From positions 1 through 42,172 of the forward strand of contig ADNK01002538.1 of the NCBI GenBank assembly GCA_000320545.1: a stretch of 42,172 nt of DNA, in the 5' to 3' direction. Positions within the stretch are counted from its first letter, which is position 1. Every line of letters starts with the position of its first letter. The stretch is from Bigelowiella natans CCMP2755 (Eukaryota > Protista > Cercozoa). The notes under the pieces are model-generated. The model had not been told where the DNA came from and made no database searches. It worked only from the letters and a program-made list of their open reading frames with translations. The translations under genes were made by a program, and so were the position numbers. This document shows, piece by piece, positions 4,381 to 25,149 of the stretch.

Positions 4381-7300
4381 CTTTCGTTTCTGCTGTTTCA
4401 GTGATCTCAAACGTGGCGTAAAAGTGCCGCTGCAGTGCGTGAATTCTTCTGAGTTCACGAATGGCATCGCTTTTGGTGGAGACGGGTGTGCCATTCAGTC
4501 TGGCTAGACGCCAGCCTCGCTGCACGCCGACGTTCCTCGCCTGGTCATAGGCCCGGACGACAAAGTTGCGTCTGTCTAGCTTGCACACGCCGCGGTCGGT
4601 GTCGAAGCGGTAAGTGTATTTGGTATCGGTCCCAGGGACGACACCTTTCTCGGTGCCCGAGGCACAAAGACCGCACACCATGAAGCAAGGAAACATGACG
4701 TAGAGCCACGGCCCTGTCAAGACGGCCTCCAACCACAAGATCGTGCACAGACGGGCTCCAACGTCCTGCGGCCATGTGAGCAGGGAAGTCGCTACAATGT
4801 CCCAATCCGTTCCCTCTTTCTCTATGGATTGGTGTCCCAGCACAAGCACTATGAAAGCACAGCCCGCTGAAGCCACCACGCAAATCGCTGCGGCAACCAC
4901 GTCCCTCAACACCCACTCATTGTAAGACGGTCTGCTAGAATGTCGCATGAGGGTCATCAGCCCGCAGCAGCATTCGACCGTTTTGGTACCGTTTTCTTCC
5001 ACATCTAACGGATCTGTTCTCCAAGACTGCCCCGCTTTGGCTTGGGTTCTAGTTCGTTTGCTTTTCATTTCTGACGTAGAACTGGCGGGCACGCCAAGAC
5101 TGGTTGTGGTGCGCAAGAACAACAAGTTCTGGTTGCTGTTAAAGTCGTCAATCCTGTCTAGACTCCGTGTCCCGCGTGAGCTCTCTACACTACCCGATGA
5201 CCTCATCTTAGATGCAGTCGCTCCTTGGCTTGGGTCGTCAGCCGACGTGGACTGCATGTCGGCATTCATTTTCAGGGTGCTCTTGAAGGCTTGTGCACTT
5301 TGCAACCTTTTGTACCTCCTACCTGCATTCGCTCCGACCAACCCTGCTTCCACCCCGACGGCCCCTGACGCAGCTGCAGCAGCAGCTGGAACTGCTGCTG
5401 TGTTTCTCTGGTCAACCACCAAAATGCCCTCATCTTCCTTATGCCTTCCGGTTCTGCCATCATCGTCATCATCATCACCGTCGTCTCCTTCTCCAACACG
5501 TTCTTGGTCCATGTCGTTGTCCCCCCCGGCATCATCCTCGATCTGCAAACCAAAATCGTATTCCATTTCTCCCATGAGCACGGAAACGACCCAGAACAAC
5601 CAAGGTATCGCCGCCACGAGGCCAAGCGGCGTGTAGCCCATTCTGAACTCCTTCGGTGTCTCTCGTGAAAACATAGATACGACCAGGAATGGCAGTGGAA
5701 ACCCAATGAACAATGCCACGACGGCCACTGCGACATTTCCACGAATGAATCCAAGCTTCTGTTCTGTTCCCAGCAGGAGAGCGCACACGGCAGCCGCGTT
5801 GAAAATCAGAAGGGAAAGGATCATGACTCGTTTTTTTGAATCGATATTGTCTCCGGGCATTCGGGTGAAGATGGACATCCAGGGGTGTCTTCTTCGGACG
5901 GCAAGAACCATCGATTTTTTCCAATTAGCGGCTGAACGAGGTTCCTCGAAATGCAGTTTGCGCGATTGGTTGAGGCTCCGATAAAATTCACGCTCATTTC
6001 TCTCAACAGCTTCTTTGGTCGCAGCGTATGGGGGTTATCTCATACGTGTCATCGTTGTTACCGCTGAGACGATGTTAGACACCGAACTGACTGAGGAAGC
6101 GACGAAATCGTTGATGTTCGGTTCGAGGAGAACTGAGGTGATGGCGGAGGTTGCCAAGCTAGGAGGCGGAACAGCGCTCAAGTTGGAAAGTATCGCGAGG
6201 GTCCGCTCTGTGACCTGCCCGATGATGGATGCAGAACAATGTGCATCAGCGATGGCGGTCAGCAAGCTCTCTCTTTCTCTCTTTCTTCCAATTCTCTCTT
6301 TCTCTCTCTGTCTCTCTCTTCCCCTCCCTCTTTCCCCATTGATGATTTCAATGTCTTTTTTCAGACCAGTGACCTCCTACCTTGCTGGATATTTCCACTG
6401 CTCTCCCTTCGGGGTAGTCCGTGAGCTGGTCTACAAGCCCCGCGACAGTTGCCCGAGGCAGGGACCTTGCAGAGCTCTGCACTGCTGATCTAGGTGAGCG
6501 CTGTGAGCGCTGCAAGCTAGGGCTCACCTCCGCGACTAGAGACAGGAGACTCTCTCTCGTGGAAATGGCCTCCTGGATTGAGATCCTGGTGCCTCTTGTG
6601 GCGCTAGTAGCGTTGGAGGTCGGGCCGGCCGCATCTGCGTTGTGCAGCAGCAGCGACGCCACACCCAATGCGCCGACGACGAAACTCTGCGTGCTGCCTT
6701 CCTGCACTCGCCCTTCAAGATCACGAGAGAGGGCGGCGACGGACACGTTGTTTGGAGATGGCTCTACGTTCAGCCTGATTTCTTCATGGGCCGCGGCGCC
6801 GTTGCAATCGTAGATGGAGGCTTGGACCCGCGTGGCGGTTGAGGCTGACGATGACTGTGACAACAGAGGCCCGAGGAGCTGGGTCTCAAGGTAACCGCTG
6901 CGTCTTCTGCCGCAGAGAGAAACCAGCCGTTTGGTGGACTCTGTGCCCCCTCCCCCCCCGTCCCCCAAAACGTCCTTGTCGTCATCGGTGATGATCAGCG
7001 AGAATGAGTAGGTGAGAGGAACATCGGCGTCCTCGTACCCCTCGCATGCAAGTTGGAACTGTGTCTGGAGCGCGTAGCCGCTCGCCGGGTTCGCCGAACA
7101 GCTCCCTAACCTCGGCGGGGTGTTCACAGCGACAACAAACGAAGCTCGTCCGGCGAGATTAGAAGGAACTGCGGTGTCTGTGACCGTCAGCTGGAAGGAC
7201 AGCTGCGTCCGAACCCCTGCCGTGAATGTCGAAGGATCTAAAGCCTCCCGTAGCATCTCGGCGGGGATGTGGAGGTACGTGCTGTTCTAGCGGCTCTGAC

Positions 7301-9789
7301 CGATGGCCGCCGTCGTGATGTTGGAGGGCGAGAGCAACGACGGGAGGTCCAAGAAATAGCTCTCTGTCCCGGCATCCGTGGAAACCTGGCACGTCCAGTT
7401 GTAACGCAGGGTCCTCCCTGACGATGGGGCCCATGAGGAGGAAGAGGAGGACCTGTGGACGACATGGCTGACGAGACGCAGATCGGTATCAATATTGAGG
7501 GTCCCTGGACCTCTTTCGAACGATGAATCGCCAGGCGGTCGGTCGATGCTGACGCTCGGTGTGCCAAAATTGACGATTCGGACCCGTTGGGTAGCGGTGC
7601 TTGTGCGTCTCAGGGTAGCATCACCATCAGGGTTGGACGAGACGTTGACGCGCACCTCGTAGAGCCTTCCCGCTACGAACACGCTTGCGTTGACCGACAG
7701 GATGGAGGATGCGGAAGAGACTGTGGGCAAAGGCACAACCTGCTGCGAGACCAAATCGACTAGCAACCATGCGTAGCGGAGGTGCGAGTTGTTACCACTG
7801 GGCCCACGCGATGGATCGTAGGAGCTGCTGGCGTCGAAGACAACCGTCATCATTCCAGACGGAGAGAAGTAGTTAGGAACTACTTCCCGCTGGTCGCCAC
7901 CATCGATCGCAGATACCAACGCAGGGTAAGACGCTATGAAGACCTAGCATGCAAAATTAAAAATAAGAATGGTATGTATGTTAAATGGGGCTCATGTTCG
8001 ACGACGCAGGCAAAAGCCTCTAAAATGTGCTTGAGGAAGAAAGGGAGGATGGGACCTTGAACGTGATGTTTGCGATAGCGCTCACAGCAGATCCTGTGAC
8101 CGTGGCTGCGAACGCTTTTAGCTCGAACTCATAAGATGCGTCTGCCGTGAGCGTTCCCACAGGCACATAGAGGTACGCAGCGGTCGGATCGACAAGGGGT
8201 ACTGATACCAACCCGTTGTTGTTGTGGCTTGTGCTGCTGTTGGTGGTGGTGGTGCCCCCGCCGCTGATCTTATATGCGGACCGCTGCGAAACTGCAATTA
8301 TCGTCTGCGTAGTTTGGACGCTCTGGCTTAAGTTACAGGTTGGCGGGACTACTTGGACTTCTAGCCGGAAATCTTCCGAAACGGGTACCGCATCGATGGT
8401 CAGCGGAGCTGGGAGGATGAAACTCGGTTGCGCGCTGCTCTCCTGAAATATCATATAATACAGAACTCAGAGTTCGGGAAGAAGCAAACGATGATAGCAT
8501 GTGTAAGGCTATTGAGAAGAGAGAGAGAAAGAGTGAGAGAGAGAGAGAGGACATGGACTCGTTACATAAAAAGGGAAAGCTTGCAGAAAAAAATAAAGAG
8601 AAATAATGGGTGGGAAGAAAGAGAGAAAAGAGAAGGAAATTTAAAAAAAAATAGTGATTACATGCGGAAGGGGTCAGAGGAGACGTTGATGTCTATCACA
8701 TCTAACAATAAATCTCTTATTCTTTCAAAATTCTCATGCCCTCCTGGTTCGTTCTGTGATGTACATTTTTTCAGAAGAAACACCTTTGTAATGACATGAA
8801 CGGCAGAAGAGGTTTGGTTCAAGAAGTTGGTCACGTTCACTCGAATCTTCATCGCGTAGCCACTAGTGAGGATGAAAACGGGAATGGAAACTACTGCCTT
8901 TGACGATTGTGTTGCTTGGGCAAAGACCACTTCGATCTCTTCCAAGGAACTCAGCTGCGATGAAGGTGTGCCGCCGCTGTGGATGAGTTCCCACGATACG
9001 CTGAACACATGCACACATTTGGCCTTTCCGTCAGGTGAGTTTTATCGGGCTAAAACCGTTTCTCAGAAGACACACCTCCTATTTCTTCCCGCAAAGCCTC
9101 CAAGCTGTGCAATTACTGTCACGTGCGTTTCGCAGATACTAAACGAGGAAGCCGCGAGGAGGGTCACCGTTACCTGCGGAACATCGTCGATATCAGTAAA
9201 ATTGCGTGACTACAAAGAGTCTTAACCCTTCTTCAAATATAGCTACTATTGCTACCACTTTTCCTCCTCCTCCTCCTACTAGTGCTGTACCGGGGAGACT
9301 TTAAATGAACTCGTTGTCGGAGACACCGTACTTGGTGAGAGAGTCGGGGTTTTAGCAACCGGAGACATAGAAGTGGGATTGCAAGTTGGAACCTCTGTAG
9401 GCGACATTGAAGTCGGCGACAGCGTTGATGGTGCAATAGATGTTGGGGAGCATGAGGATGGAGAATGTGAGGTAGGCAAAAGCGATGTAGGAGAAAATGT
9501 TAATGGTGATCGAGTCGAGGGGGAGCACGATGAAGGGCTTTGGGTAGCAGGAGATAAAGTGGAAGGGGACAAAGTTGTTGGAGTCCTCGTAGGGATGTGT
9601 GTATACGGATGTCCAGAGGTAGGGTGGATGGTAGGCCTATACATAGACGAAAGACGATACATCAATTGAGTTTGATGATGAAGATGCTAATGAAGACACT
9701 AATGATAAGAGGAGCAAGCTACATATGAGGGCCACCGGAAATTGTGCATTGTTGTTCCGTCATATTCGTTGATCGTACCACACGAACTC

Positions 9790-12992: not shown

Positions 12993-13109
12993 ATGTCGGG
13001 AAGCAATCCGCCAAAGCACGTTCCCCCTCCCCTCTCATCACCTGCCGGTCGGAGGAAAAAGCCAAGTCCCTCCCCGCCTCCGCGGCCTCAAAGGTATAAT
13101 ATAAATATG

Positions 13110-13156
<47 letters not shown>

Positions 13157-13541
13157 GACGGATGCTGTTCCTCTCTTCTCGACTATGCCGTACTGTACTT
13201 ATCTTGATCCGTGCTCTTAACCTTTTTTATCACAGCGCTCATAAGAAGTTGGAGCTCTCTCGGAGAGGGGTACTTAAAAGAGTGTTATACGGTCTGAACA
13301 ATGATGAACCTAATGCCTTTAATCGTCAGCAAAAGTTCCTCGATAAAAGCAGCCATGCACGCCGCACTCTCTCGCCCTTACGGAGCAAGTCTCAATCTAG
13401 ACCGAGCAGCCCTCCCACCAGTGCATCATCTCCTAGAAACCTGAAGAGTAGTTCAAAGCGGCATTGTTTACCATAGAAAATGATAATTACGGCCAAACCA
13501 CTACAATGACATTATAATATAATGTATATATACATATATAT

Positions 13542-13593
<52 letters not shown>

Positions 13594-14306
13594 AAGATGC
13601 ACATTTATTCTGGGCTTGTGTGCGTGGAATCCTCTCCGAATAATGTGAATACGGCAGATCCGATTTTGACCACGAGAAGCACTTCCCGCTCATTAGACTC
13701 AAGGGACAACGCCACGAGAAAGAAGGCTCCTCCTTCAGCAGGGCAAACCAAGAACAACCCCCCCTCCTCCTCGCCCCACTCGTCTTCAACCCGGAACGAC
13801 TCGAAGCGAGTAAGTTAGCTTGGATGCACAGTACATGAATACATTCTATACCATATCACCTTGATACATCCAAACATCTGCCTTCCTTATTCGTGAGTTC
13901 TTGGAAGCTCCAAGTCGTTTTTTTTTCCAGCAGCAAAGTAGCGTGTAATGACCATCAAATCATATGTTTCCACCTGATCAGCAACGGCCAGTAGAGTCTA
14001 AATCGCTCCTAAAGGTAGTGACTTATACATTCGCGCACAGCTCAATTCCAACGGAGATATCAGCAGAATTAAGTCATCTATATACGTTACCATCTGCATT
14101 TCTCGTTCCCTCTCCCTTACTCTTTGTAGACAAGACGGGCAATAGTGAACGAGATTGTGCATACAGAGGATACATACGTCGCTTCATTACAGCTGCTCCT
14201 TACCGATGTAGTAGAGCTCTTGTGTTGATCAATAGAAATGAATGTGACTTACTGATATAACTGTATAACTATATTAAGATATACATAAATAATATATATA
14301 TATATA

Positions 14307-14344
<38 letters not shown>

Positions 14345-15085
14345 CTGCTTATGCCCATTGAAGCTAAATTCAAGACGAAATTGCAGAAGTCTACACAGGT
14401 CGTCGTTTTGCATAATCTGCATCATCATCATCAACTTCTTCTTCTTCATCATCATTTTCTCTCTCCCTTTCTACTACAACATATCAAAGCACATTGAAAA
14501 AAGAGAGAACACCCTGATGGCTGCATGGAAATGACGCTACGTCGCCCTTTCGTCATCACGAAATGATATAATACACATGACGCTGTTGATAATGATTGAA
14601 CTATAATCGGCGCGCTCAATCCTGAATAACACCTTGTTCCACGAATACCATTCTTTCTTCATCCCCTTCATCCTCCTCGTCGTGACAATCGCTATTGTGT
14701 TGTTATTAATGCCCACAGCTGACACTCGTATCGTCCATGGCCGCTCTGGAGACTCTCATAGTCCTCCACAAACGTCTCTACCAGGTGATGCGACGACGAG
14801 AAGAAAATAGATACATAACGGTTTTCGCAATGTTGCTTTGATGTGTTTTTCTGGTAAGCTTACGCATGCACGTACATGCGGGGGTGTTAGGATCTGAAAG
14901 CAAGAGCTGGTAGCATCTTGGCTACTGTCAAACGCGAGCGGAAGAACGCTGCAAGAGCAGCAGCACAACAACAGAAGAAACATCAAGGTATGGGCCTCGA
15001 TCATGAAATATTTCATCCTTCAAAGCATTCTTGCACGTTTCACTAGTCGCAATAAAGACATAAGCTCGATGATAAAAAACGCCAA

Positions 15086-15120
<35 letters not shown>

Positions 15121-15349
15121 ATATAAGACGGAGAAGCAAGAAGAAACGGAAGGGCAAGAAGCGGGTACATGTCAGCAACGAAATCATCGAATCAACGAGT
15201 TCGCTCAAAGTCACCGATGGTAATAGAGTAGGGTTGAGGGAAATGGGGTATAGAGGAGTGGGTGGGGGGTGGGGAGTACGATAGAGAAGATACATCTGGT
15301 TTTGCGTTGTATAAACCCATGGATGTTAAGATATATTGAAGGTTTCTAT

Positions 15350-15386
<37 letters not shown>

Positions 15387-16061
15387 GGGGGGGGGGGGGG
15401 GGGGTTTGCATGTTTGTGTGTGTGTCTTTTTCCAATTGCCGCCACCAGCGGACCACCTTTCCATCCGCACAAGCAATATGGTCCTGGGTAGCATCATGGT
15501 GGAGGCTTAAGTCAGGAAGCTTAGGACGTTCACGCTCAAAGTTTCAAGGAAATAACAGCAAGTCTCCCCCCCCCCCACGAAAGGCCGCCCCCCCCCCGCC
15601 CCCTAGTAAGAACGCGCCTCCTCCGCCAAACAAAACGAGCGGCGAGAGCGGGGAGAGCAAGAGCAAGGCTGCGGCTCCAAAGCTTCCCCAACGGATTAAG
15701 GCATTGAAAGAGTCTCTACAACTGCAGAAAAGGTGCTGCACGACAGTGTCTATTACTACCCTCACTTCCAGTTGATGGTGAAATATGCACGTGATTTGCT
15801 CATTGATTCATCGGTTTGGGTGAATGTGTTATGTACATTTCCAGAAACTCGCCTAAGCTTCCTCCCAAGCGCCGGACAACACCGCAAAACTCTCCCACCC
15901 GCACAAAGCAGCGAGAGCAAGCAGCTGCTACTAGTAGCTCTGCGGCAGGGGGGGAGGGGGGGGCAGGGAGAAGAGGTCAGAATGAGAATGTACACGGAGG
16001 AGGACGAGGACGAGGAGGAGGGGCGGAGAGAGATGTTAAAAATGATCAAGTTGATACTACA

Positions 16062-16093
<32 letters not shown>

Positions 16094-16751
16094 AACTGCT
16101 TGTTCTCCAGGTCGATTTAATGATAGCGATGTATAAGCTGATAGTGCATGGGGAGGGCTGATTAATAGACAAACACACATATGCACACACATGCGTGCAT
16201 GCATACGTCGCTGCGTATGATAGGGAACGATGTTCACTTACCTGACACCGCTGTTATGCTCGCACAGCAAGAGACAGAAGGGGCAGGTGCCATATCATCA
16301 TAATCATCATCATCCCCCTCATCATCCTTATCATCATCCTTATCATCATCCTCATCATCAACACCATCATCATCATCCTCCTTAGCATCATTATCACCAT
16401 CATCATCCTCATCGCCATCACCATCATTATCACCATCATCATCATCACCACTATCATCATCATCATCATCGCAATTCCAACTCGCTCAGTCATCCAGCTG
16501 TTTCACGAGTACGGAGCTCACTTCAAGATGTAAAAGGACATTCATGATGATATTCGATGAGAGTGTGCTCAACTGTGTGACTGTGCCTGTGCTATACACC
16601 CTACCCCCCCTCTTAGGTACTTCCAATATGTGCAAAACTACCCAAAGCTTGCACTTGACATCTCAACGTCGATAAAGAGAAGCAAAACGCTCAAAAGATT
16701 CATTACAGATGTACGTCATTCATTCCACCTTCAAGCTAATATGTCGTTATC

Positions 16752-16797
<46 letters not shown>

Positions 16798-17382
16798 ATA
16801 AATATAAATGAATAAATAATTAAATTCATCATATCATATACATAATTACTGGCAAATATGAGACAGAGCACCGAGTAATGTGTTGATGATCATCAGGCTT
16901 GCAAAAGAAACAAGCAGCATGGAATATTTAGCCTTCTCATACTACCCATTCAGAGAATTCCGAGGTGAAAAAGCACAAAGGAAAAAGAGAAAGACGAAGA
17001 TGAGGAGGATGGGAGGGGGGGAGGGGGAGGTACAAGGCACAAAAAATCGAATAGAATAAATGCATTTGAAAGTAGTATTCCTTTGTAATATTTGGTTATT
17101 AATATTGAGTGTGAGTGATTTATGAGTGTGTATTAACACACTACTTCATATTTCAAGGTACGTGCTGCTTCTGGAGAGCCTAGATAAATCAACACCACTG
17201 CTTCATTTGTAAGTTGTCATTTCTCTCCATCTCTCCCCCCCCCCCCCCATCTCTCTAAATCACTCTCAAAATCTGTACATATTATGATATTTAATAGCGA
17301 CCCACACAAATTCAGTCGTTAAATATCATGTATGTATACATCTTGTATACACAAATGACATGTGTGCTAATACGTGAGTGGG

Positions 17383-17427
<45 letters not shown>

Positions 17428-18082
17428 AAATCCACACCAGGCACTTACCAAGATTGGAACTTACCCTCGAAAAGCTTCGCTCCGTGACGAAGGTCAGAGA
17501 TATACGATATCACTAGCAGTGCTGATGATGCTGACTTTGAGAAGTGAAATGCTTCAACGAATCTTGCAAAACGAATACTCGCCAGGACGATGATGACACA
17601 TAAAGCACCCATTCGCATTCACGTAAACTGGTATTGAAAACAGGCCATTGATGAATGTCAGCGCCAAAGTGACAACTCGCTAAAGCTCTTTACTCTGCAG
17701 GTGATAGTGCATGTAGCAGCATGCAGTAGTAGAAGTAGAAGTAGAAGTAGAGGTAGTAGTAGAATCTATGATTGGGGCATTTGAGAGCATCTGATGAAAG
17801 GAAGATTGACTGATATTATTCAAGACTACATTGCTGGGAACTCCCTCGGAGCTTCAAATACTGACGCCCTCGAGAGAGTTTAAGAGGCAGGATGATGTGT
17901 TGTTTCTCAAGGTGTGCTGCTGCCTCTCAGGAATGATGCGAGCGTGCAATGTCAAACATCATTCTCTTTGTAGATTATGTAATGAACAATTGCCTCCATG
18001 CCTACAAGATCTAAGGACAGAACACATATGTGCTAATACGAATTGCACACACACACACACACAGAGAGAGAGAGATATATTA

Positions 18083-18122
<40 letters not shown>

Positions 18123-18796
18123 CAACACATGTTTAGACATATAATATGCATCGTATTTAACGTAATAGGCCGAAGAGCTTGGAGGAGAGATAGACGAGAC
18201 GAAATGGTCTCAGGTTAAACTCTGCTTCTATGCTAAAGAGGAGGAGTAGCACCGTCTTTGCTTTGTACCTCTTCCTTTCAAAATAATGATTATAATTCTG
18301 ACGGTGGAAAAAATTACCATATCAATCCTAAAATACCATCCCTCCCCCCTCACCTCCCCACACCGATAATAGGTATAGTTGATGGGCTTCTACACACATA
18401 ATTTATGTAACTATTAGGCCGCCTCGGTGAATCTGCTGCTTTTCAACGACCTTCTCCTCATCATCGATTCCGTGAAGAAATCAGGCCCTGAATATGTCAA
18501 GCATTTCTTCCTTCACGACATCACGATCTATGAGGGAAAAAACCAGGTACTGACAGCTAAGTGCATGTGCAAAATGCTTCATCATTGGGATACTGAGCAC
18601 TTAGCATTCCTACTCGAATCGGAGGGATAAGATAGACTTCGTCTGTCGTTTTTTGCAGTCTGTGTGGGATTTGTATACAGGGTCGCCAGAGCTGCTATAT
18701 GCTCGCGTGATGTTTGACACGGCAAAGCAACTTCGCAAATGGAGTGAGGTGGGTACCCGCTCGCACGTATTCATAGTTAATATATACTCTCACACT

Positions 18797-18830
<34 letters not shown>

Positions 18831-18831
18831 C

Positions 18832-18891
<60 letters not shown>

Positions 18892-20034
18892 TTGTGTGTG
18901 CGTATCGCGTTTGAAAATGCTTGCGTGAATAGCAGAGTCTGCAAGTCGGCCACAAACAACGCTCGCTCTGCACAACTGTTAATAGACTTTTGATTGCTTT
19001 GCTGCTAATGATCTCTCGTCGCAGACCACATTCCCCGCCATCAAATCGGCGAAGGAGAGCCAGATGCTACAGCACAACAAGAAATCGAGCCGTACTTTCC
19101 AAAAGGTGGCGGATAGATAGTATAATGATATGCAATATCTCGTTTCTTATAGTTTTACGCTATATACTCTTCATAGTGTGCAAATCGTTGATCATTAGAG
19201 CTTCGAGAAAAAGCAAATAGTTTAAATGCCACCCCTCCCTTCTACCCCCCCCCCGCGTCCTCCTCTTTCTGACTTTTAACCCATTCCTTAGAGCGACAGC
19301 ATCGTAGACCGAGTCAATGTTTATCTTCGCGTCAGGCCATTCATTACTAAAGATGAGAAGGAGGTTGGTGAAGCTCATTTTGTAGCGACATCAGAAAGAC
19401 GATGTGTTTCTTTAATAACAGTCAATTCATTGGAAGATGCTGCACTTTCCGCTTCCCCCCCCCCCCGCCCCCGCCCTCCTTCTCACTATAACATCAATAA
19501 TATCAGTAATATCCATTATAGGGTCAATGATGATTCGGTTGTTGTCTTATTGTTGCGGCAGATGGACGAGAAATGCTTGAGCTTAGAAGGTGATAATATG
19601 GCCGTTTTGCACCGTCCTTCAACGGGGGGAGGCCCTTCTGAGAGGGTAAAGCGCAAGTGGCCGTGCGTGTGTGCGTGCGTGTGCGTGTGCGTGTGCACAT
19701 GTATACGATATACGAAGTGAACGTTGTTATGTTTTCATTGAGCAGCATTCCCACGTTTTTGTTTGAGAATACATTTCTTTATTTGTATTTGTACACGCGT
19801 ATAAATAAGCCTCGTCCACTCTGACTTGCATTTCTTTGTGGCCTCTTCCAAGATAAGGGAGAGGGTCGCCATCTTCGATCGATGCTTCGATGAGAAGGCG
19901 ACGCAACGTGATGTGTTTAAGCGTGTTGGTGAAGAGGTAGGGTATTGTGCATTAGAGGCTGCAAGCAATATCAATTTTTGTTGTTGAAAATCACACTCAC
20001 ACACACACACACACACACATACACACACACACAC

Positions 20035-20086
<52 letters not shown>

Positions 20087-21553
20087 GGAGAGAGGGAGAG
20101 AGGGAGAAGGGGGGGGGGGGGGAGAAAAAGAGAGAGAAGTTTTTTTTTTTTTTTAAATACGATGATTATTCAATCCCTCACTTTTTCCCTCTCTCTCTCT
20201 CTCTTTCTCTCTCTCTTCTCTCAGGTTTTGGGATCTGTCTTTTGTGGTTACAACTGTGCAATAATCGCCTATGGGAACACAGGTCATTCTAACTTTTCCT
20301 ATGGCAAGATTTTTGGCCGAATGCCCTCAAACTTGAAATAAGAGCTGGTATACGATGGGCTTGTTCAATTACAAGTGTCTCATCATCAATAACACAAGTC
20401 GCAGCCCAACGAAGAGCTTATCGACCAATTCTGAGACGATGCTTTCCTTCATCTTTCTTCTGAAGAGTTGGTACGTCTATTAGGAAGTGGAAAGACCCAC
20501 ACGATAACAGGGGAGGGGGATGGCCACAACAAAGGCATCTTGCCCAGAATACTCGAGCAGTTGTTTCGAGTTTTGCAGAGAAAGAATTGGTACAAATCGA
20601 GAATCTGGGTAGTAATGATACTTCTATGATAACTAATAGCACTTATTCCATGGATTGAAACGACACCTCACAACAACAACAAGAACAGCAGCACCCATAA
20701 CAACAATAACAACATCAATATCAACAATATTTCCGCTGAATCTTAAGATAGCGATTAATTTGAGCATAGAGTTTACTCAAGCCACGGTCACTCGATCTCT
20801 GAATTGGATGTTTTTTTACGCTGCACGTGTGTGTGTGTGGGTGTGTGTGTGCGTGTGTTTGTTTTGTACTGCTCAGGTCTCATATGTGCAGATATACTGC
20901 AATAAGTTAAACGACTACACCAAACACCATCCCCTCCATACAGCATCTAAAAATCAATACGTGTTTGGGAAAAGATTGAATCAACCCTCACTACGCTCCC
21001 CCCCCCCCACCTTCCCCATTAGATGTCATTTGAAGTCGTAGCCATATGGCACTCGTTGTCATATCAAATCAAGCATGGTTTGATGTTTTTTTCACCCTTC
21101 ATGTTGTTTAATCATTCCTTTTCGTTCACAGATTGTACGATCTCCAAGGCACGCACAGGCACCTTCGTCAGCCTCTTAAAATTGTTAAAAAAAATCATTC
21201 CCACGAGGTACGATTCAGCTGCACCTAAGGCTAGAAGGGGGGGGAGGTAACAAGGGTCTATTGATGCGGTTTTATGTTTTTATACAACATTCCTGAAACG
21301 AAAATAAGGTTTGAAACGTGCTTTAAACAACTTTACATCTCCAAATAAGGTGTCAGGAATGGTCAAGACAGAGATTCGGTAGTTGTCTCTGAGCACTCTT
21401 ACTTTGTAGCAGAACTTAGGATGTTTACATTGCGCCATGTTAATGCTATGAGCGAGGCAGAGATGATGTTTGCAGATCTATGTATGTCGTTGTTGCTTCA
21501 ATAGCAGCATAACATGCACACGAGATAAGGGGGAGAAAAACGATGAGAATGCG

Positions 21554-21602
<49 letters not shown>

Positions 21603-22354
21603 AAAAAAAAGGGAGGGGACATATTCGCTTCGTATTCAGAAAGTGAGGAGGAGAAGGATTGACAATTCAAATCACAGCCATTCCGCATACTGATGCAGGC
21701 GTGTGCCTTAGTGTGCCTTTTCATTTCAATGAGTACATTGTGATAGCAAACGCCTGCTGTTTTCAATGTGTATTCAGATCGGCTTTAGAAGCGATGAAGA
21801 TCATTGATTCTGTGGGTTGATTTTGCTTCATTCAATGTATACTTTTTCTTAGAGACATGAACATTCGTAAGCCAGAGCTCACCGTTGTGAACAATCCTTT
21901 CATCCTAACCCCGCCATCCTTCCTCAGGGCAATTCCAAACGAATAACCCGCGCACATCGTATGAATGATGCATCCTCTCGTAGCCATTCTGGTAGGGTGA
22001 AGCACCTGCAGCTTCATCGTTAGAAGCAGTAGACGCATAGTAATAGAAAGGAGGATATATGCTACCTACTGCAACCCTCAATGGCGTGTGAGCCTGTGCA
22101 ATTTCCACCGTATCTATACATCTAACGTTTTTTGGTGATATGAGAGAAACTAGACACTCTTTCTTCGCTATTATTCGCATGTTTAAAAACACCCGCAAAT
22201 GTGTGGGAGGGTTTTGTCTCCGTCTTTCTCTCTTTCCTCCGATGATTCTTTTGCGTGTTGCTTTTTAGAGGTTCCTTCTAATTGTGGTTATGTTTGTTTG
22301 TTGTTGGTTGGTATCATCGTTGTTTGCCGGCATATATCGACGATACATCTCTTC

Positions 22355-22387
<33 letters not shown>

Positions 22388-22914
22388 CCTCGATTTTCCT
22401 ACAATATATCTCAAGTGTTCACGATCCACTGCCAGCTGCACAACGGTAGTAGACCACACTTATAGAATGACAATGATGATGATGATGATTATGATGATTA
22501 TGATGATAGAAGAGGAGAAAGGGTGATAGTAGTACGGCAGTAGTAGTTGTAGTAGTAGTAGTGGTGGTGGTGGTGGTAGTAGAGGTCTTAATAAGTTTTT
22601 TGGTGAAAGAATGTACTTGATTATGATAGGATAGTAAAATGGCCGAGTAATGATCGAGAAGCATTCTATAATGCAGGGCGATGTTTGATTTGTTGCTATT
22701 GTCCTTCTTCTTCTTCAGCATCTTGATTATCTTCATTACATTCTTCTTCTTCTTCTTCTTCTTCTCCTTCTTCTTCTACGTGTGCACGAAATAGGTCAAA
22801 AGGATGCAACGACGAAGACGATTTTGCAGCTCGTGGACCTCGCAGGGAGTGAGAATGTTAAGGTGGTGCTGCTTAAGATGCGGTGTTTGACACGATGCCA
22901 TAGTTGAAAACACT

Positions 22915-22954
<40 letters not shown>

Positions 22955-23290
22955 ACATAAGTTTTATCTTTCTACGCGTGCGTGTCTGTTTATTCTTTGG
23001 GAGAGAGGGGAGGGGGTCAATGCGCATTGTAGCTGGAGATCATTGAGCATGAACGATAAGAGGAGCCAATAGTGTTAGCGGATATATACGTGACATGGGC
23101 AAGTGCCAGGAGGGATATTGATGAAAGAGGCAAAGAGGTGATGATGTTCGTGTTGGAAGGAAACTGGTGTGGAAGGAGTCGCTCTTGCAGAATCAATGCA
23201 TATAAACAAGTCTCTCACATCACTAGGTGCTGCCTCCCCCCCTCCAAACAAGTTGTCTAAATGTGTACACGTGTGAGTATTGGTCGAGAG

Positions 23291-23327
<37 letters not shown>

Positions 23328-23578
23328 TGGGTGTGTGTGTGTGTGTGTGTGTGTGTGTACATATCGTATTCGTGCAATGATTGGAGCTTGTTACACTCAC
23401 ACACAAAACTCCTAAGAATATGTATTCTACATTCAAGAGCATTTTCATGCTATTAACAAACCACACGATTCATTAGGTCGTGCATTGCACGCGGTGCTGT
23501 CTAATGAGGGCAAATCCTCGCAAAAGAAACAAGTAGAGCGTCAATAGTCGAACACCAGCGATTGATTATCGATCTTAT

Positions 23579-23614
<36 letters not shown>

Positions 23615-24159
23615 GATGGACGATTGTAATGATAATGATGTTAAGGACAATGAGAATGATAGCTCATAATGCAAGATTCATTTGGGATCTTAGCTTTGAG
23701 TAATGTACCCCATACTGATGTAGGTTATAAGCTTCAGAGAGACGACTCTCACGCATATTCTAAGCGATGTTCTTAGCGGTGAATGAGTCACAACACAACA
23801 CATACAAACACGCACATGCACACACACATGCACACGATAAATCACATAAAGACACCGAAACACACACAGTAAACAAAAGAGCGACAGAGCAGCCGCTGGC
23901 TCGCTTCTGTTAATCAATATACTACTCACGATATAGTCAATGACTAATTTGAAGAATTGCGTGCTTCAATGCTGATGATCAGGAAACTTCGTTTGTTCAT
24001 TGATTTTAACCGCATCAGCGAGGTGAAGGACGATGAAATGCGTCACTGATTTACCAATCCGTTATCCGCCAATCATATCATTCTATATGCGGTGTTTGCA
24101 TCCACCGATTTACCAATCCTTGAATCATATTATTCTATATGCGGTCTTGCATACTCTCC

Positions 24160-24206
<47 letters not shown>

Positions 24207-24862
24207 GCTCTTTCTCTCTTTAAAACACACAAACACACACACAAACACACACACACACATATTTTTACATATATAAAAATATATATATATATATTTATTC
24301 ATATATTATATAAACACGCAATTGTTGTACAATTCCCTGGTACGCAGCCCTGCGCACAGACAGGCTGAACTGACGTCCAAAACGCTCGCTTTCGGAATGG
24401 GGTAGTATTCCACACCATAATGAAATAGTGCCACGGCATGCAGCATTCTGTTGGCGATGGATATGCTACTTCACATTTGTATACGAGTCGTTGGCTCGAG
24501 CATATGATGCGTATTGTTCTCGTAATTGGCCGTTTGCTGCATTGCATAGTAGGGTAGTGCGTTTTATTGTCATATCGGTGAGAGATACCACCATCTCTTT
24601 TTCGTCTTTTGCGCCAAAAAAAACCCTTACGTGAGACATATTGCTCAAACTGAACAACACGGATTGGGCCTGCTTTCCTGCAGCATGCCCTAGCCGGAAC
24701 GTACGGCTGTGAGCAGTTGTTTATTTTCAAGCCGCTTTTGCTTCTCAGTTGTTTCTTTTTCTTCACATTAAAGTAATAGTAAGATGTATCACTCTCAGAG
24801 CGAAACGAATCGATGTGCGTGCCAGTCCTAATAAAGCCGTTAAAGAAACGAAGCTCTCGTAA
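12993..24862 (+). CDS. RhoGEF (DH-PH) - kinesin motor fusion protein, >30 exons, motor at the C-terminus
   Basis: Pro/Ser-rich N-terminus (MSGSNPPKHVPPP). DH: TRRAIVNEIVHTEDTYVASLQLLLTD (from 14130), LETLIVLHKRLYQ|DLKAR, LFHEYGAHFKM|YFQYVQNY, LLILPIQRIPR|YVLLLESL. PH: ILTPSREFKRQDDV, VNLLLFNDLLLI, MFDTAKQLRKWSE. Kinesin: VNVYLRVRP (19292-19363), FDRCFDEKATQRDVF, GYNCAIIAYGNTG|SGKTHT, VSYVQIYCN, MNDASSRSHS, LVDLAGSE, INKSLTSLG, FRETTLTHIL, TLAFGMG|AKRI. The exact 3' end is uncertain. Confidence 0.88.
24048..24152. repeat. Imperfect intronic direct repeat, two copies of ~50 bp
   Basis: gatttaccaatcc...aatcatat(c/t)attctatatgcggt...ttgcat occurs twice in tandem. Confidence 0.7.
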
Positions 24863-25149
24863 TTGTGACATGAAGCATTTTAGATTCAATTCTTATTTGT
24901 TGTTGTTGTTGTTTAGTGTGTGTGTGTGGGTGTGTGTGCGCGCGTGCATAGATTCTTTGCTCGCAGCATATAATCGTTTATTGTGATACGTGTTTCTGCA
25001 ACTACACGATTCAAGGCACTTCCTTTCTGGAGTTTGGAGAACTGTCACGTGGGGATGATGATGATGATGATGATGAAATCAGTTTCATAGATGCCGTTGC
25101 GAGCAAGGAGAATCTTAGAGTTGTTGATACTGATGATGATTGCAGTTGT

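What the first reader, a model, noticed from the sequence alone, without database searches (positions are those of the whole stretch)
12993..24862. Single gene fusing a RhoGEF DH-PH module to a complete C-terminal kinesin motor
Seen: the last PH exon (...KWSE, phase 0) joins exon 19025-19105 (27 codons) and exon 19292-19363 (SDSIVDRVNVYLRVRP) in frame. No stop or intergenic gap lies between them, giving a ~30-aa linker. The P-loop, switch I (SSRSH) and switch II (DLAGSE) are intact. Established: in animals, kinesin-6/centralspindlin recruits the separate RhoGEF ECT2 to position cytokinesis, and Dictyostelium MyoM fuses a RhoGEF to a myosin. I know of no characterised kinesin with a built-in DH-PH. 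Inference: a self-delivering Rac/Rho activator linking microtubules to actin, for example in cytokinesis or pseudopod formation.
Basis: partly seen in the sequence, partly recalled or inferred. Interest (0 to 1): 0.85.

Follow-up and report, generated by a model that had tools for sequence, protein, structure and literature searches.

The report
Kinesin motor fused to a RhoGEF
One heavily spliced gene of this protist encodes a Rho-GTPase activator (DH-PH) joined directly to a microtubule motor (kinesin) at its C-terminus, and this apparently undescribed fusion is conserved across rhizarian protists, where it could link microtubules to actin control in one protein.

Summary
Spliced RNA-derived contigs from three studies join the last PH exon (ends 18748) to 19025-19105, then to the first motor exon 19292-19363, all GT..AG and in frame. 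Single contigs run from the DH domain to the kinesin P-loop.

The same architecture occurs in at least eight other sources:
- Amorphochlora amoebiformis, annotated as one gene.
- A relative's genome in which one open frame spans DH, PH, linker and half the motor.
- A metagenome scaffold with one intronless 889-codon ORF.
- Mataza (with an added CAP-Gly domain) and Lapot.

One correction: the CDS ends at 25058, not 24862.

The motor has an intact P-loop, switch I and switch II. In my tree it belongs to a 100/100-supported clade outside the sampled kinesin-1, -3, -4, -5, -6, -8, -12 and -14. It keeps an N-kinesin-like neck linker and has no tail coiled coil. A predicted structure confirms the DH-PH fold.

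GEF activity, motility and direction are untested. I found no paper describing this fusion. It is a new variant of known kinds. The genome is probably Bigelowiella natans.

The parts
12993..13093 (+). Exon 1 with the putative start codon; Pro/Ser/Lys-rich N-terminus
   Evidence: First ATG after an in-frame stop; donor GT; weak match to P0007 residues 44-62. No RNA data here.
13236..13447 (+). Exon 2, low-complexity N-terminal region (the donor could instead be 13450)
   Evidence: Phase-compatible AG/GT sites and an open frame.
13658..13809 (+). Exon 3, low-complexity N-terminal region
   Evidence: Phase-compatible AG/GT sites; GTAAGT donor.
13982..14014 (+). Exon 4, QRPVESKSLLK, just before the DH domain
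   Evidence: Matches P0005 KRPKESKSLLRK; phase 0-0.
14130..14207 (+). Exon 5, DH conserved region 1 (TRRAIVNEIVHTEDTYVASLQLLLTD)
   Evidence: Pfam RhoGEF positions 1-25; 74% identical to P0005.
14345..14398 (+). Exon 6, DH (LLMPIEAKFKTKLQKSTQ)
   Evidence: Homology to P0005/P0007 and splice phases.
14719..14784 (+). Exon 7, DH (LTLVSSMAALETLIVLHKRLYQ)
   Evidence: Homology to P0007 (64% identity) and splice phases.
14891..14987 (+). Exon 8, DH helix running into the insert (DLKARAGSILATVKRERK...)
   Evidence: Homology to P0005/P0006/P0007; donor phase 1.
14988..16223 (+). Region holding the basic Ser/Pro/Lys-rich insert inside the DH domain; exon borders not resolved
   Evidence: Only low-complexity matches, for example 15139-15219 to P0006 residues 67-92 at 59% identity. 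GC is higher here, 0.525. In the orthologue the insert is predicted disordered. No RNA was laid here.
16224..16286 (+). Exon, DH resumes (..PDTAVMLAQQETEGA)
   Evidence: 87% identical to P0006 residues 170-184; splice phases.
16490..16529 (+). Exon, DH (VIQLFHEYGAHFK)
   Evidence: Homology and splice phases.
16617..16710 (+). Exon, DH (YFQYVQNYPKLALDISTSIKRSKTLKRFITD)
   Evidence: Homology and splice phases.
16897..16964 (+). Exon, DH conserved region 3, first half (..GIFSLLILPIQRIP)
   Evidence: 75-79% identical to orthologues. The RNA contigs' loose end equals 16933-16962 and is joined to 17156/17158.
17158..17208 (+). Exon, DH conserved region 3, second half (YVLLLESLDKSTPLLH)
   Evidence: Pfam RhoGEF positions 138-158; RNA contigs begin here.
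17441..17492 (+). Exon, DH (HLPRLELTLEKLRSVTK)
   Evidence: Homology and phases; RNA joint 17492|17644.
17644..17700 (+). Exon, last DH helix (AIDECQRQSDNSLKLFTLQ, with the invariant Asn)
   Evidence: RNA joints on both sides; 85-95% identical to orthologues.
17825..17911 (+). Exon, DH-PH junction and first PH strand
   Evidence: RNA joints on both sides.
18169..18213 (+). Exon, PH (AEELGGEIDETKWSQ)
   Evidence: RNA joints on both sides; 93% identical to P0005.
18418..18546 (+). Exon, PH core strands (..LLLFNDLLLI..)
   Evidence: RNA joints on both sides; invariant FND.
18659..18748 (+). Exon, last PH strands and C-terminal helix (..AKQLRKWSE, invariant Trp)
   Evidence: RNA joints 18546|18659 and 18748|19025.
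19025..19105 (+). Linker exon, 27 codons (TTFPAIKSAKESQMLQHNKKSSRTFQK)
   Evidence: RNA joints 18748|19025 and 19105|19292 in three studies; aligns to P0005 residues 539-564.
19292..19363 (+). First motor exon (SDSIVDRVNVYLRVRPFITKDEKE)
   Evidence: RNA joints on both sides.
19562..19645 (+). Motor exon
   Evidence: RNA joints on both sides.
19853..19936 (+). Motor exon (IRERVAIFDRCFDEKATQRDVFKRVGEE)
   Evidence: RNA joint 19645|19853; the contig length fits this exon plus the next; Pfam Kinesin positions 36-73.
20225..20282 (+). Motor exon, start of the P-loop (..AIIAYGNT-G)
   Evidence: RNA joint 20282|20484; Pfam Kinesin positions 46-85.
20484..20608 (+). Motor exon, P-loop SGKT and helix alpha2
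   Evidence: RNA contigs; Pfam Kinesin 31.4 bits, above the cut-off.
20877..20905 (+). Motor exon (VSYVQIYCN)
   Evidence: RNA joint 20905|21132. An unspliced contig 20876-21161 also exists.
21132..21207 (+). Motor exon
   Evidence: RNA joints on both sides.
21350..21378 (+). Motor exon (VSGMVKTEI)
   Evidence: RNA joints on both sides.
21778..21811 (+). Motor exon (SALEAMKIIDS)
   Evidence: RNA joints on both sides.
21928..21991 (+). Motor exon with switch I (NDASSRSHS; SSRSH at 21973-21987)
   Evidence: RNA joint 21811|21928; Pfam Kinesin positions 179-204.
22416..22445 (+). Motor exon (FTIHCQLHN)
   Evidence: Homology to P0001/P0005 and splice phases. No RNA joint was listed.
22795..22862 (+). 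Motor exon with switch II (LVDLAGSENVK; DLAGSE at 22836-22853)
   Evidence: Pfam Kinesin positions 214-239. The RNA loose end after 22863 equals 23161-23190.
23160..23226 (+). Motor exon (ETGVEGVALAESMHINKSLTSL)
   Evidence: RNA loose end; 88-92% identical to orthologues.
23477..23532 (+). Motor exon (RALHAVLSNEGKSSQKKQ)
   Evidence: Homology and phases.
23724..23778 (+). Motor exon (VISFRETTLTHILSDVLS)
   Evidence: Homology (84-89% identity) and phases.
23983..24022 (+). Motor exon (NFVCSLILTASA)
   Evidence: Homology and phases.
24348..24401 (+). Motor exon, helix alpha6 (PAHRQAELTSKTLAFGM)
   Evidence: Homology (84-89% identity) and phases.
24799..24858 (+).
   Evidence: Homology and phases. 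PDB kinesin-1 and kinesin-3 alignments reach this region of the profile.
25016..25058 (+). Last exon: conserved C-terminal motif HFLSGVWRTVTWG plus the TGA stop
   Evidence: 85-92% identical to orthologues; invariant L, V, W, V; phase fits; a separate last exon in Amorphochlora too.

Best explanation
A single gene (CDS 12993-25058, at least 40 small exons) encodes a protein of roughly 1,000-1,150 residues. Its order is: a disordered basic N-terminus; a Dbl-homology (DH) domain interrupted by a long basic Ser/Pro/Lys-rich disordered insert; a PH domain; a linker of about 30 residues; a complete kinesin motor at the C-terminus; a neck-linker-like segment; and a 13-residue conserved tail (HFLxGVWRTVxW). 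It belongs to a conserved rhizarian family of RhoGEF-kinesins.

Most likely mechanism (inferred, not shown): the kinesin head binds microtubules in an ATP-dependent way and so moves or holds the DH-PH module on microtubules or at their ends next to membrane. There the DH-PH activates a Rho/Rac-type GTPase locally. This would couple microtubule position to actin remodelling, for example in filopodia or cytokinesis of these amoeboid algae.

Shown: one transcript and one ORF, conservation, intact catalytic motifs, and the DH-PH fold. Inferred: GEF activity, motility, direction and cellular role.
For: RNA:
- Spliced contigs of three studies carry joints 18748|19025, 19105|19292 and 19363|19562. 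Single contigs span from the DH domain to the P-loop.
- No contig depth falls in bin 18773-18969, inside the intron that follows the last PH exon.
- Reading frame and splice phases are consistent through the whole resolved exon chain.

Orthologues with RhoGEF plus a C-terminal kinesin by Pfam:
- P0005/P0037.
- P0006.
- P0007, Amorphochlora, annotated as one 33.8-kb gene.
- P0008, one intronless 889-codon ORF on a metagenome scaffold.
- P0004, with one open frame L001:5935-7377 covering DH, PH, linker and motor up to switch I.
- P0038.
- P0153, Mataza, with an added CAP-Gly domain.
- P0040, Lapot.

Conservation and fold:
- Invariant residues across eight orthologues include the DH conserved region 3 (P.I.R..Y), the Asn of the last DH helix, the PH FND and Trp, the P-loop, SSRSH, DLAGSEN and the C-terminal L..VW..V.
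- An AlphaFold model of the DH C-terminal half plus PH (pLDDT 79.5) matches solved DH/PH tandems at E about 1e-9 over 200-234 columns.
- PDB sequence matches to N-type kinesins run through the neck-linker region.

Genome context: the gene is single-copy in this genome, and the genome holds many other RhoGEF exons.
Against: - No biochemical or localisation data exist for any member.
- After the neck-linker-like segment there is only a 13-residue conserved tail and no predicted dimerising tail coiled coil (that model has low confidence, mean pLDDT 55). Processive transport is therefore not implied.
- With the cargo attached at the N-terminal side of the motor, as in kinesin-14, direction cannot be read from sequence.
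- The P-loop reads GNTGSGKT rather than the usual GQTGSGKT.
- Exon borders in the DH insert (14988-16223) and the 5' end are not backed by RNA here.
- Raw RNA reads (X21) gave only 18 reads, so expression level and strand are poorly documented.
- I did not show a Rho-family GTPase in this genome.
Confidence: 0.6

Rival explanations
1. Microtubule-tethered, microtubule-gated GEF rather than a transporter. The kinesin head acts mainly as a nucleotide-dependent microtubule anchor that sequesters or releases the DH-PH, by the same logic as GEF-H1. The basic disordered insert gives a second, electrostatic contact with the microtubule.
For: No coiled coil follows the motor; the tail is only 20-27 residues in all orthologues. 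The DH insert is strongly basic, 43 K/R against 16 D/E in 179 residues of P0005. The Mataza orthologue adds a CAP-Gly microtubule-binding domain.
Against: All ATPase motifs, the neck-linker-like segment and the C-terminal motif are strongly conserved: the motor is 71-81% identical among chlorarachniophyte orthologues against 60-69% for DH-PH. That degree of conservation suggests selection on mechanochemistry, not just on binding. Clustering through the PH domain could allow movement of monomers, as I recall for Unc104.
Confidence: 0.3
2. A kinesin whose DH-PH is a non-catalytic targeting or cargo-binding tail that binds membrane or a GTPase without activating it.
For: Pfam scores for the RhoGEF domain are modest (34-101 bits) and the DH is interrupted by a long insert in chlorarachniophytes. 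Relatives in the same motor clade carry WW or FYVE targeting domains in its place.
Against: The DH motifs that I recall as needed for exchange are invariant or conserved: the conserved-region-1 Glu in NEI..TE..Y, the conserved-region-3 PIQR.PRY.LLL, and the Asn of the last helix. The insert lies in a loop and is predicted disordered. The fold matches active DH/PH tandems.
Confidence: 0.08
3. Two adjacent genes (a RhoGEF and a kinesin) joined only by read-through, by chimeric assembly of RNA contigs, or by a genome misassembly.
For: Logan contigs are assemblies, and the tool warns that a contig across two genes does not prove one transcript. The linker exon contains an internal ATG.
Against: The joints are canonical splices linking PH to linker to motor. 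There is no stop in the linker exon and no depth in the intron after the PH exon. The same fusion is encoded by uninterrupted genomic ORFs in two other organisms and by complete transcripts of at least five more.
Confidence: 0.02

Closest known systems
Dictyostelium MyoM (a myosin with a C-terminal DH-PH RhoGEF)
   Same: A cytoskeletal motor and a Dbl-type RhoGEF in one polypeptide. PMC5499878 lists myosin among the domains joined to DH in Mycetozoa.
   Different: It is an actin motor, not a microtubule motor. The order is reversed (motor N-terminal, GEF C-terminal). It is an unrelated lineage and an independent fusion.
Centralspindlin (kinesin-6 MKLP1/ZEN-4 with CYK-4) recruiting the RhoGEF ECT2
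   Same: A kinesin places a DH-PH RhoGEF at microtubules to activate Rho locally. ECT2 is the top PDB sequence match of the DH C-terminal half (E 8e-7).
   Different: There the parts are separate proteins acting in trans. Here the motor is not in the kinesin-6 clade. No BRCT domains were found by Pfam. The ECT2 match is weak and sits among many DH hits.
GEF-H1 (ARHGEF2), a microtubule-bound DH-PH RhoGEF
   Same: A DH-PH GEF whose activity is tied to microtubule association (PMC13751295 abstract).
   Different: GEF-H1 has no motor domain and binds microtubules through other regions or partners.
Kinesin-14 (Ncd, Kar3, KIFC1, plant KCBP): the known C-terminal-motor kinesins
   Same: The motor sits at the C-terminal end and the functional 'tail' domains are N-terminal. 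KCBP also carries signalling or cytoskeleton-binding domains N-terminally (PMC4574192).
   Different: The motor groups apart from the kinesin-14 sequences in the tree. The segment after helix alpha6 aligns with N-kinesin neck linkers. No neck coiled coil abuts the motor.
Kinesin-3 KIF1A/Unc104 (PH domain) and KIF13B (CAP-Gly)
   Same: Kinesins carrying a PH or a CAP-Gly module. The best PDB matches of the motor are KIF13B, KIF5 and KIF1A. The Mataza orthologue has CAP-Gly.
   Different: Those have N-terminal motors with FHA and coiled-coil regions and no DH domain. In the tree the fusion clade lies outside kinesin-3.

Membership tests
Kinesin superfamily (Pfam PF00225) | Motor-domain profile match | tested here: met
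   Window exons hit PF00225 collinearly at positions 36-264, and one exon alone exceeds the cut-off (31.4 bits). Orthologues score 246-280 bits over positions 1-326.
Kinesin superfamily (Pfam PF00225) | P-loop GxxxxGKT, switch I SSRSH, switch II DxxGxE | tested here: met
   GNTGSGKT, NDASSRSHS and DLAGSEN are present in the window and invariant in eight orthologues.
Kinesin superfamily (Pfam PF00225) | Microtubule-stimulated ATPase and motility | not testable with these tools
   Needs biochemistry.
Dbl-family RhoGEF (DH-PH; Pfam PF00621) | DH-domain profile match with conserved regions 1 and 3 | tested here: met
   Window exons match PF00621 positions 1-25 (21.1 bits) and 138-158; each is below the cut-off alone because the exons are tiny. 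Orthologues score 97-101 bits over positions 1-180. The motifs NEIVHTEDTYV and LLILPIQRIPRYVLLLESL are present.
Dbl-family RhoGEF (DH-PH; Pfam PF00621) | A PH fold directly after the DH domain | tested here: met
   The AlphaFold model of orthologue P0004 residues 1-220 has seven strands plus a C-terminal helix. Foldseek matches DH/PH tandems of PDZ-RhoGEF, P-Rex1 and FARP2 at E about 1e-9 over 200-234 columns. Pfam PH models did not hit. This was tested on an orthologue, not on the window's own joined protein.
Dbl-family RhoGEF (DH-PH; Pfam PF00621) | Nucleotide-exchange activity on a Rho-family GTPase | not testable with these tools
   Needs biochemistry. The presence of Rho GTPases in this genome was not checked.
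Kinesin-14 (C-terminal motors) | Motor groups with kinesin-14 in a phylogeny | tested here: not met
   The three sequences labelled KIFC1 or KIFC1-like form their own 100/100 clade. The fusion clade is a separate 100/100 clade on a long stem.
Kinesin-14 (C-terminal motors) | Neck coiled coil abutting the motor N-terminus | tested here: inconclusive
   In the model, the PH C-terminal helix runs to about 12 residues before strand beta1, but pLDDT is below 50 there. The linker varies from about 25 to about 100 residues among orthologues.
Kinesin-6 (MKLP1/KIF23, the centralspindlin motor) | Motor groups with kinesin-6 in a phylogeny | tested here: not met
   Four KIF23-type sequences form a 100/100 clade away from the fusion clade.
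New rhizarian clade of C-terminal-motor kinesins (DH-PH, WW or FYVE heads) | Monophyly of the motors and a shared C-terminal tail motif | tested here: met
   A 100/100 clade of 10 rows, with a tail of 20-27 residues in the DH-PH members and invariant L..VW..V across the eight aligned DH-PH orthologues. Kinesin-2, -7, -9, -10, -13 and higher families were not in my sample, so 'new family' is not shown.

The most novel reading that the evidence does not exclude
This gene is the founding example of a rhizarian-specific kinesin family. Its motor sits at the C-terminus yet keeps an N-kinesin-type neck linker, which would be a third mechanical layout beside N-type kinesins and kinesin-14. Its 'tail' is an active RhoGEF, so one polypeptide both reads microtubule geometry and switches on Rho/Rac at the cortex. 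That could drive the filopodia or reticulopodia and the cytokinesis of these amoeboid algae. The conserved HFLxGVWRTVxW end may act as a docking or autoinhibitory element.
Probability: 0.3. Interest if true: 0.78.

Novelty: new variant of a known kind. Interest (0 to 1): 0.62.

Why it matters
Cells have to tell the actin cortex where the microtubules are. In animals this is done in trans, by centralspindlin recruiting ECT2 and by release of GEF-H1. A natural protein that welds a RhoGEF to a kinesin works like a 'Rosetta stone' fusion. It argues that coupling a motor to a GEF is a recurrent solution, and it gives a one-protein system in which to test how motor state controls Rho activation.

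The finding also shows a well-supported clade of C-terminal-motor kinesins that are not kinesin-14, which bears on how motor position and neck elements set direction.

Finally, it adds to the picture of lineage-specific innovation in kinesins and Rho regulators among amoeboid Rhizaria (PMC5499878, PMC13746701).

Tried and rejected
- Whole-genome six-frame Pfam searches of the window's own genome did not list this contig for either family, because its exons are too short to rank. Exon-by-exon Pfam was needed instead.
- Raw RNA reads of run X21 gave only 18 reads. They were useless for transcript ends or strand.
- The ESM Atlas search gave no usable hit.
- The first homologous-protein run drew its words from the low-complexity N-terminal 500 residues and was uninformative beyond four orthologues. 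Region-restricted searches worked.
- The supplement of the Dbl survey is not held, so I could not check its domain tables.
- The minus-strand ORF 24299-24889 (196 aa), which overlaps the last exons, has no Pfam hit. I take it as chance.
- The full-length AlphaFold model is low-confidence (mean pLDDT 55) and was used only for order/disorder and secondary structure.
- I rejected kinesin-6 and kinesin-14 membership and the two-gene reading.
The window was searched exon by exon by reference, and natural orthologues returned by the tools stood in for it. P0001, about 95% identical to the window by my reading of its sequence against the window's motor exons, served as the proxy in the trees.

Full report
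**What was checked**

The finding claims that one gene (12993-24862, + strand) fuses a DH-PH RhoGEF to a complete C-terminal kinesin motor. The claim rests on in-frame splicing of the last PH exon to 19025-19105 and then to 19292-19363. I treated the junction, the domain calls and the functional reading as separate questions.

**The sequence**

The window is intron-rich eukaryotic DNA at about 43% GC, and almost every intron holds (AC)n, (AT)n or (GA)n runs.
- Exon-by-exon Pfam scans give collinear pieces of the kinesin motor, profile positions 36-73, 46-85, 85-126, 179-204, 214-239 and 239-264, between 19805 and 23273.
- They also give pieces of the RhoGEF/DH domain, positions 1-25 at 14130-14225 and 138-158 at 17126-17209.
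- The exons are so small (median 60 nt downstream of the DH insert) that whole-genome six-frame searches did not even list this contig.

**RNA evidence**

The run search returned about 20 runs of one organism that hold 11-26% of the stretch's words, most of them 21-26%, which is about what exons alone would give. I laid three of them, from three different studies, plus one raw RNA-seq run on 17000-22900.

The contigs skip the introns at GT..AG borders, so they derive from spliced RNA.
- Joints, after the tool's stated cut offsets: 17492|17644, 17700|17825, 17911|18169, 18213|18418, 18546|18659, 18748|19025, 19105|19292, 19363|19562, 19645|19853, 20282|20484, 20905|21132, 21207|21350, 21378|21778 and 21811|21928.
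- Single contigs of 1066-1311 nt run from before 17158 to 20608. The loose end before 17158 equals 16933-16962, which is the preceding DH exon.
- These contigs therefore reach from the DH domain, through PH and linker, to the P-loop exon.
- A second loose end joins 22862 to 23160.
- The bin 18773-18969, inside the intron behind the last PH exon, has zero depth in all three runs.
- Contig depths are of the same order on both sides of the junction.

Every exon from 17644 to 19645 is a multiple of three and in one frame. The product reads ...LRKWSE-TTFPAIKSAKESQMLQHNKKSSRTFQK-SDSIVDRVNVYLRVRPF... without a stop. The raw-read run gave only 18 reads and adds nothing.

**Orthologues**

A phmmer search with the P-loop exon (window:20486-20608) found only five proteins.
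- P0001 is a 288-aa motor fragment. By my reading of its sequence against the window's motor exons it is about 95% identical to them.
- P0005 (940 aa) and P0004 (459 aa) both carry RhoGEF and Kinesin by Pfam.

Region-restricted searches with P0005 then found more proteins with PF00621 plus PF00225:
- P0006.
- P0007, 'hypothetical protein AAMO2058_000695200' of the chlorarachniophyte Amorphochlora amoebiformis.
- P0008, from an ENA metagenome scaffold.
- P0038, from Logan.
- P0039/P0153, from Mataza sp. D1, which also has an N-terminal CAP-Gly domain.
- P0040, from Lapot gusevi.

Three genomic contexts matter.
- In Amorphochlora the fusion is annotated as one 33.8-kb gene with at least 33 small exons.
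- In assembly GCA_014466275.1 a single open frame, L001:5935-7377, runs from mid-DH through PH and linker to switch I of the motor.
- On the metagenome scaffold the whole 889-residue protein is one intronless ORF.

A junction that lies inside an uninterrupted ORF in other organisms rules out 'two genes'.

**Gene model in the window**

tblastn of P0005/P0007 maps collinearly from 13982 to 25055. Combined with AG/GT sites and phases this gives two chains:
- 8 exons upstream of the DH insert: 12993-14987, 793 nt, ending in phase 1.
- 31 exons downstream: 16224-25058, 1985 nt, starting with 2 bases of a split codon, which gives 660 residues plus a stop.

All borders are canonical. The stretch 14988-16223 encodes a basic low-complexity insert whose exon borders I could not fix without RNA.

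The last exon 25016-25058 supplies (S)HFLSGVWRTVTWG and TGA. It matches HFL(S/T)GVWRTV(N/T/R)W at the very end of all chlorarachniophyte orthologues, and a W-L-x-x-V-W-K-x-V version in Mataza, Lapot and P0038. It is also a separate last exon in Amorphochlora. The gene is single-copy in this genome.

The window was queried exon by exon, and natural orthologues stood in for it.

**Domains**

*DH.*
- Conserved region 1 (RRAIVNEIVHTEDTYVASL), conserved region 3 (LLILPIQRIPRYVLLLESLDKSTP) and the Asn of the last helix are present. In the alignment of eight orthologues the conserved-region-3 residues and the Asn are invariant.
- In chlorarachniophytes the DH is split by an insert of about 180 residues. 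It is basic (43 K/R against 16 D/E) and Ser/Pro/Thr-rich, and it is predicted disordered (pLDDT about 25).
- Mataza, Lapot and P0038 have a contiguous DH.

*PH.*
- Pfam PH models do not hit.
- An AlphaFold model of P0004 residues 1-220 (pLDDT 79.5) shows the DH C-terminal helices, seven strands and a C-terminal helix.
- Foldseek matches solved DH/PH tandems (PDZ-RhoGEF, P-Rex1, FARP2, LARG, Vav) at E about 1e-9 over 200-234 columns.
- By sequence the best PDB match is ECT2 (E 8e-7), but it stands among many DH-PH proteins.

*Motor.*
- GNTGSGKT, NDASSRSHS and DLAGSEN are all invariant.
- The profile matches KIF13B, KIF5 and KIF1A motors at E about 1e-76. The alignments run on through the region behind helix alpha6, which corresponds to the N-kinesin neck linker.
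- After that segment only 13 conserved residues remain.
- The low-confidence full-length model shows no tail coiled coil. In it the PH C-terminal helix extends to about 12 residues before strand beta1.

**Phylogeny**

I built two trees of motor domains:
- 108 rows, quick search.
- 41 rows, IQ-TREE with ultrafast bootstrap and SH-aLRT.

Both recover the named families as clades, judged from the database labels of the rows: kinesin-1, -3, -5, -6, -8, -12 and -14. Kinesin-4 is represented by a single KIF27 row. Both trees place all DH-PH fusions in a 100/100 clade on a long stem (0.63), outside all of those families. Two further C-terminal-motor kinesins fall in the same clade; their N-terminal parts carry WW (P0041) or FYVE (P0042) domains. 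The order inside that clade is unresolved.

My sample came from the hit list, so it is biased and lacks kinesin-2, -7, -9, -10, -13 and others. 'Orphan clade' is shown. 'New family' is not.

**Organism**

The tools withhold names. Four observations fit Bigelowiella natans as described in PMC13746701 (94.7 Mb, mean intron 182 bp, highest ACn density among Rhizaria):
- The nearest orthologues are chlorarachniophyte.
- The genome is 91.4 Mb.
- The median intron in this gene is about 200 bp.
- ACn repeats are dense.

This is an inference.

**How it probably works**

What is shown is one polypeptide with an apparently competent DH-PH and an apparently competent kinesin head, conserved from chlorarachniophytes to Mataza and Lapot. 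That breadth puts its age at least as deep as a large part of Rhizaria.

My preferred reading (about 0.6) is a microtubule-coupled RhoGEF. ATP-dependent microtubule binding or movement by the head places the DH-PH on microtubules or at their ends near membrane, where it activates a Rho/Rac GTPase locally.

I put the tether reading at about 0.3. The absence of a dimerising tail, the basic insert and the CAP-Gly of Mataza favour a tether or tip-tracker. The strong conservation of the motor, neck linker and C-terminal motif favours real mechanochemistry. Direction cannot be read from sequence, because the load is attached at the motor's N-terminal side as in kinesin-14, while the neck-linker-like element is N-kinesin-like.

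**Novelty**

Nine full-text searches found no description of a kinesin carrying a DH domain. The 175-genome survey of Dbl RhoGEFs lists myosin, kinase, RasGAP, LRR and other partners but never mentions kinesin. Its supplement is not held.

The proteins exist in public databases only as hypothetical or unnamed entries. I therefore class this as a new variant of known kinds, meaning a new domain architecture and a probable new kinesin clade, not a new kind of system.

**Verdict**

- The structural interpretation is supported at about 0.97.
- The functional interpretation is plausible but untested.
- Interest is 0.62. This is a clean, conserved, expressed and apparently undescribed motor-GEF fusion in organisms that are hard but not impossible to manipulate.

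Noticed in passing
window 20876-21161: An unspliced contig covering exon 20877-20905, the whole intron and the start of exon 21132 is present in all three RNA-derived runs. Its depth is lower than that of the spliced joint (146 against 337, 4.8 against 25, 12 against 46). If the intron is retained, the frame runs into a TAG at 21039-21041 and truncates the motor after the VSYVQIYCNK strand. This may be a non-productive isoform or pre-mRNA.
   Followed up: partly
window 21962-22343: Contig of run X1 (depth 57) that continues unspliced from the switch I exon into the following intron. No spliced joint 21991|22416 was listed, possibly because joints at repeats were dropped.
   Followed up: no
window 17644-19645: Eight consecutive exons (57, 87, 45, 129, 90, 81, 72 and 84 nt) are all multiples of three and phase 0-0, including those that flank the PH-motor junction. 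Skipping any one of them would keep the frame.
   Followed up: no
window 6348-7919, minus strand: Two long ORFs (302 and 210 aa) hit the REJ domain (PF02010, E 3e-19 and 6e-13). A polycystin/REJ-like gene lies upstream on the opposite strand.
   Followed up: partly
window, introns throughout 13100-24300: Nearly every intron carries a dinucleotide microsatellite, (AC)n, (AT)n or (GA)n. Read laying skipped nine such places. This matches the reported ACn richness of rhizarian genomes, highest in Bigelowiella natans (PMC13746701).
   Followed up: partly
P0153 (Mataza sp. D1), P0041 and P0042 (Logan): The Mataza orthologue has CAP-Gly, then DH-PH, then kinesin. Two relatives in the same motor clade carry WW or FYVE domains instead of DH-PH, also with the motor at the C-terminus. 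The clade seems to swap N-terminal targeting or signalling heads.
   Followed up: partly
window 21009: An A>C difference in the one contig of run X4 that covers it (depth 12); it is intronic. Probably a strain variant.
   Followed up: no
window 24299-24889, minus strand: A 196-aa ORF antisense to the last motor exons, with no Pfam hit. Probably chance.
   Followed up: partly
This suggests that unusual kinesin architectures are frequent in this organism.
   Followed up: no
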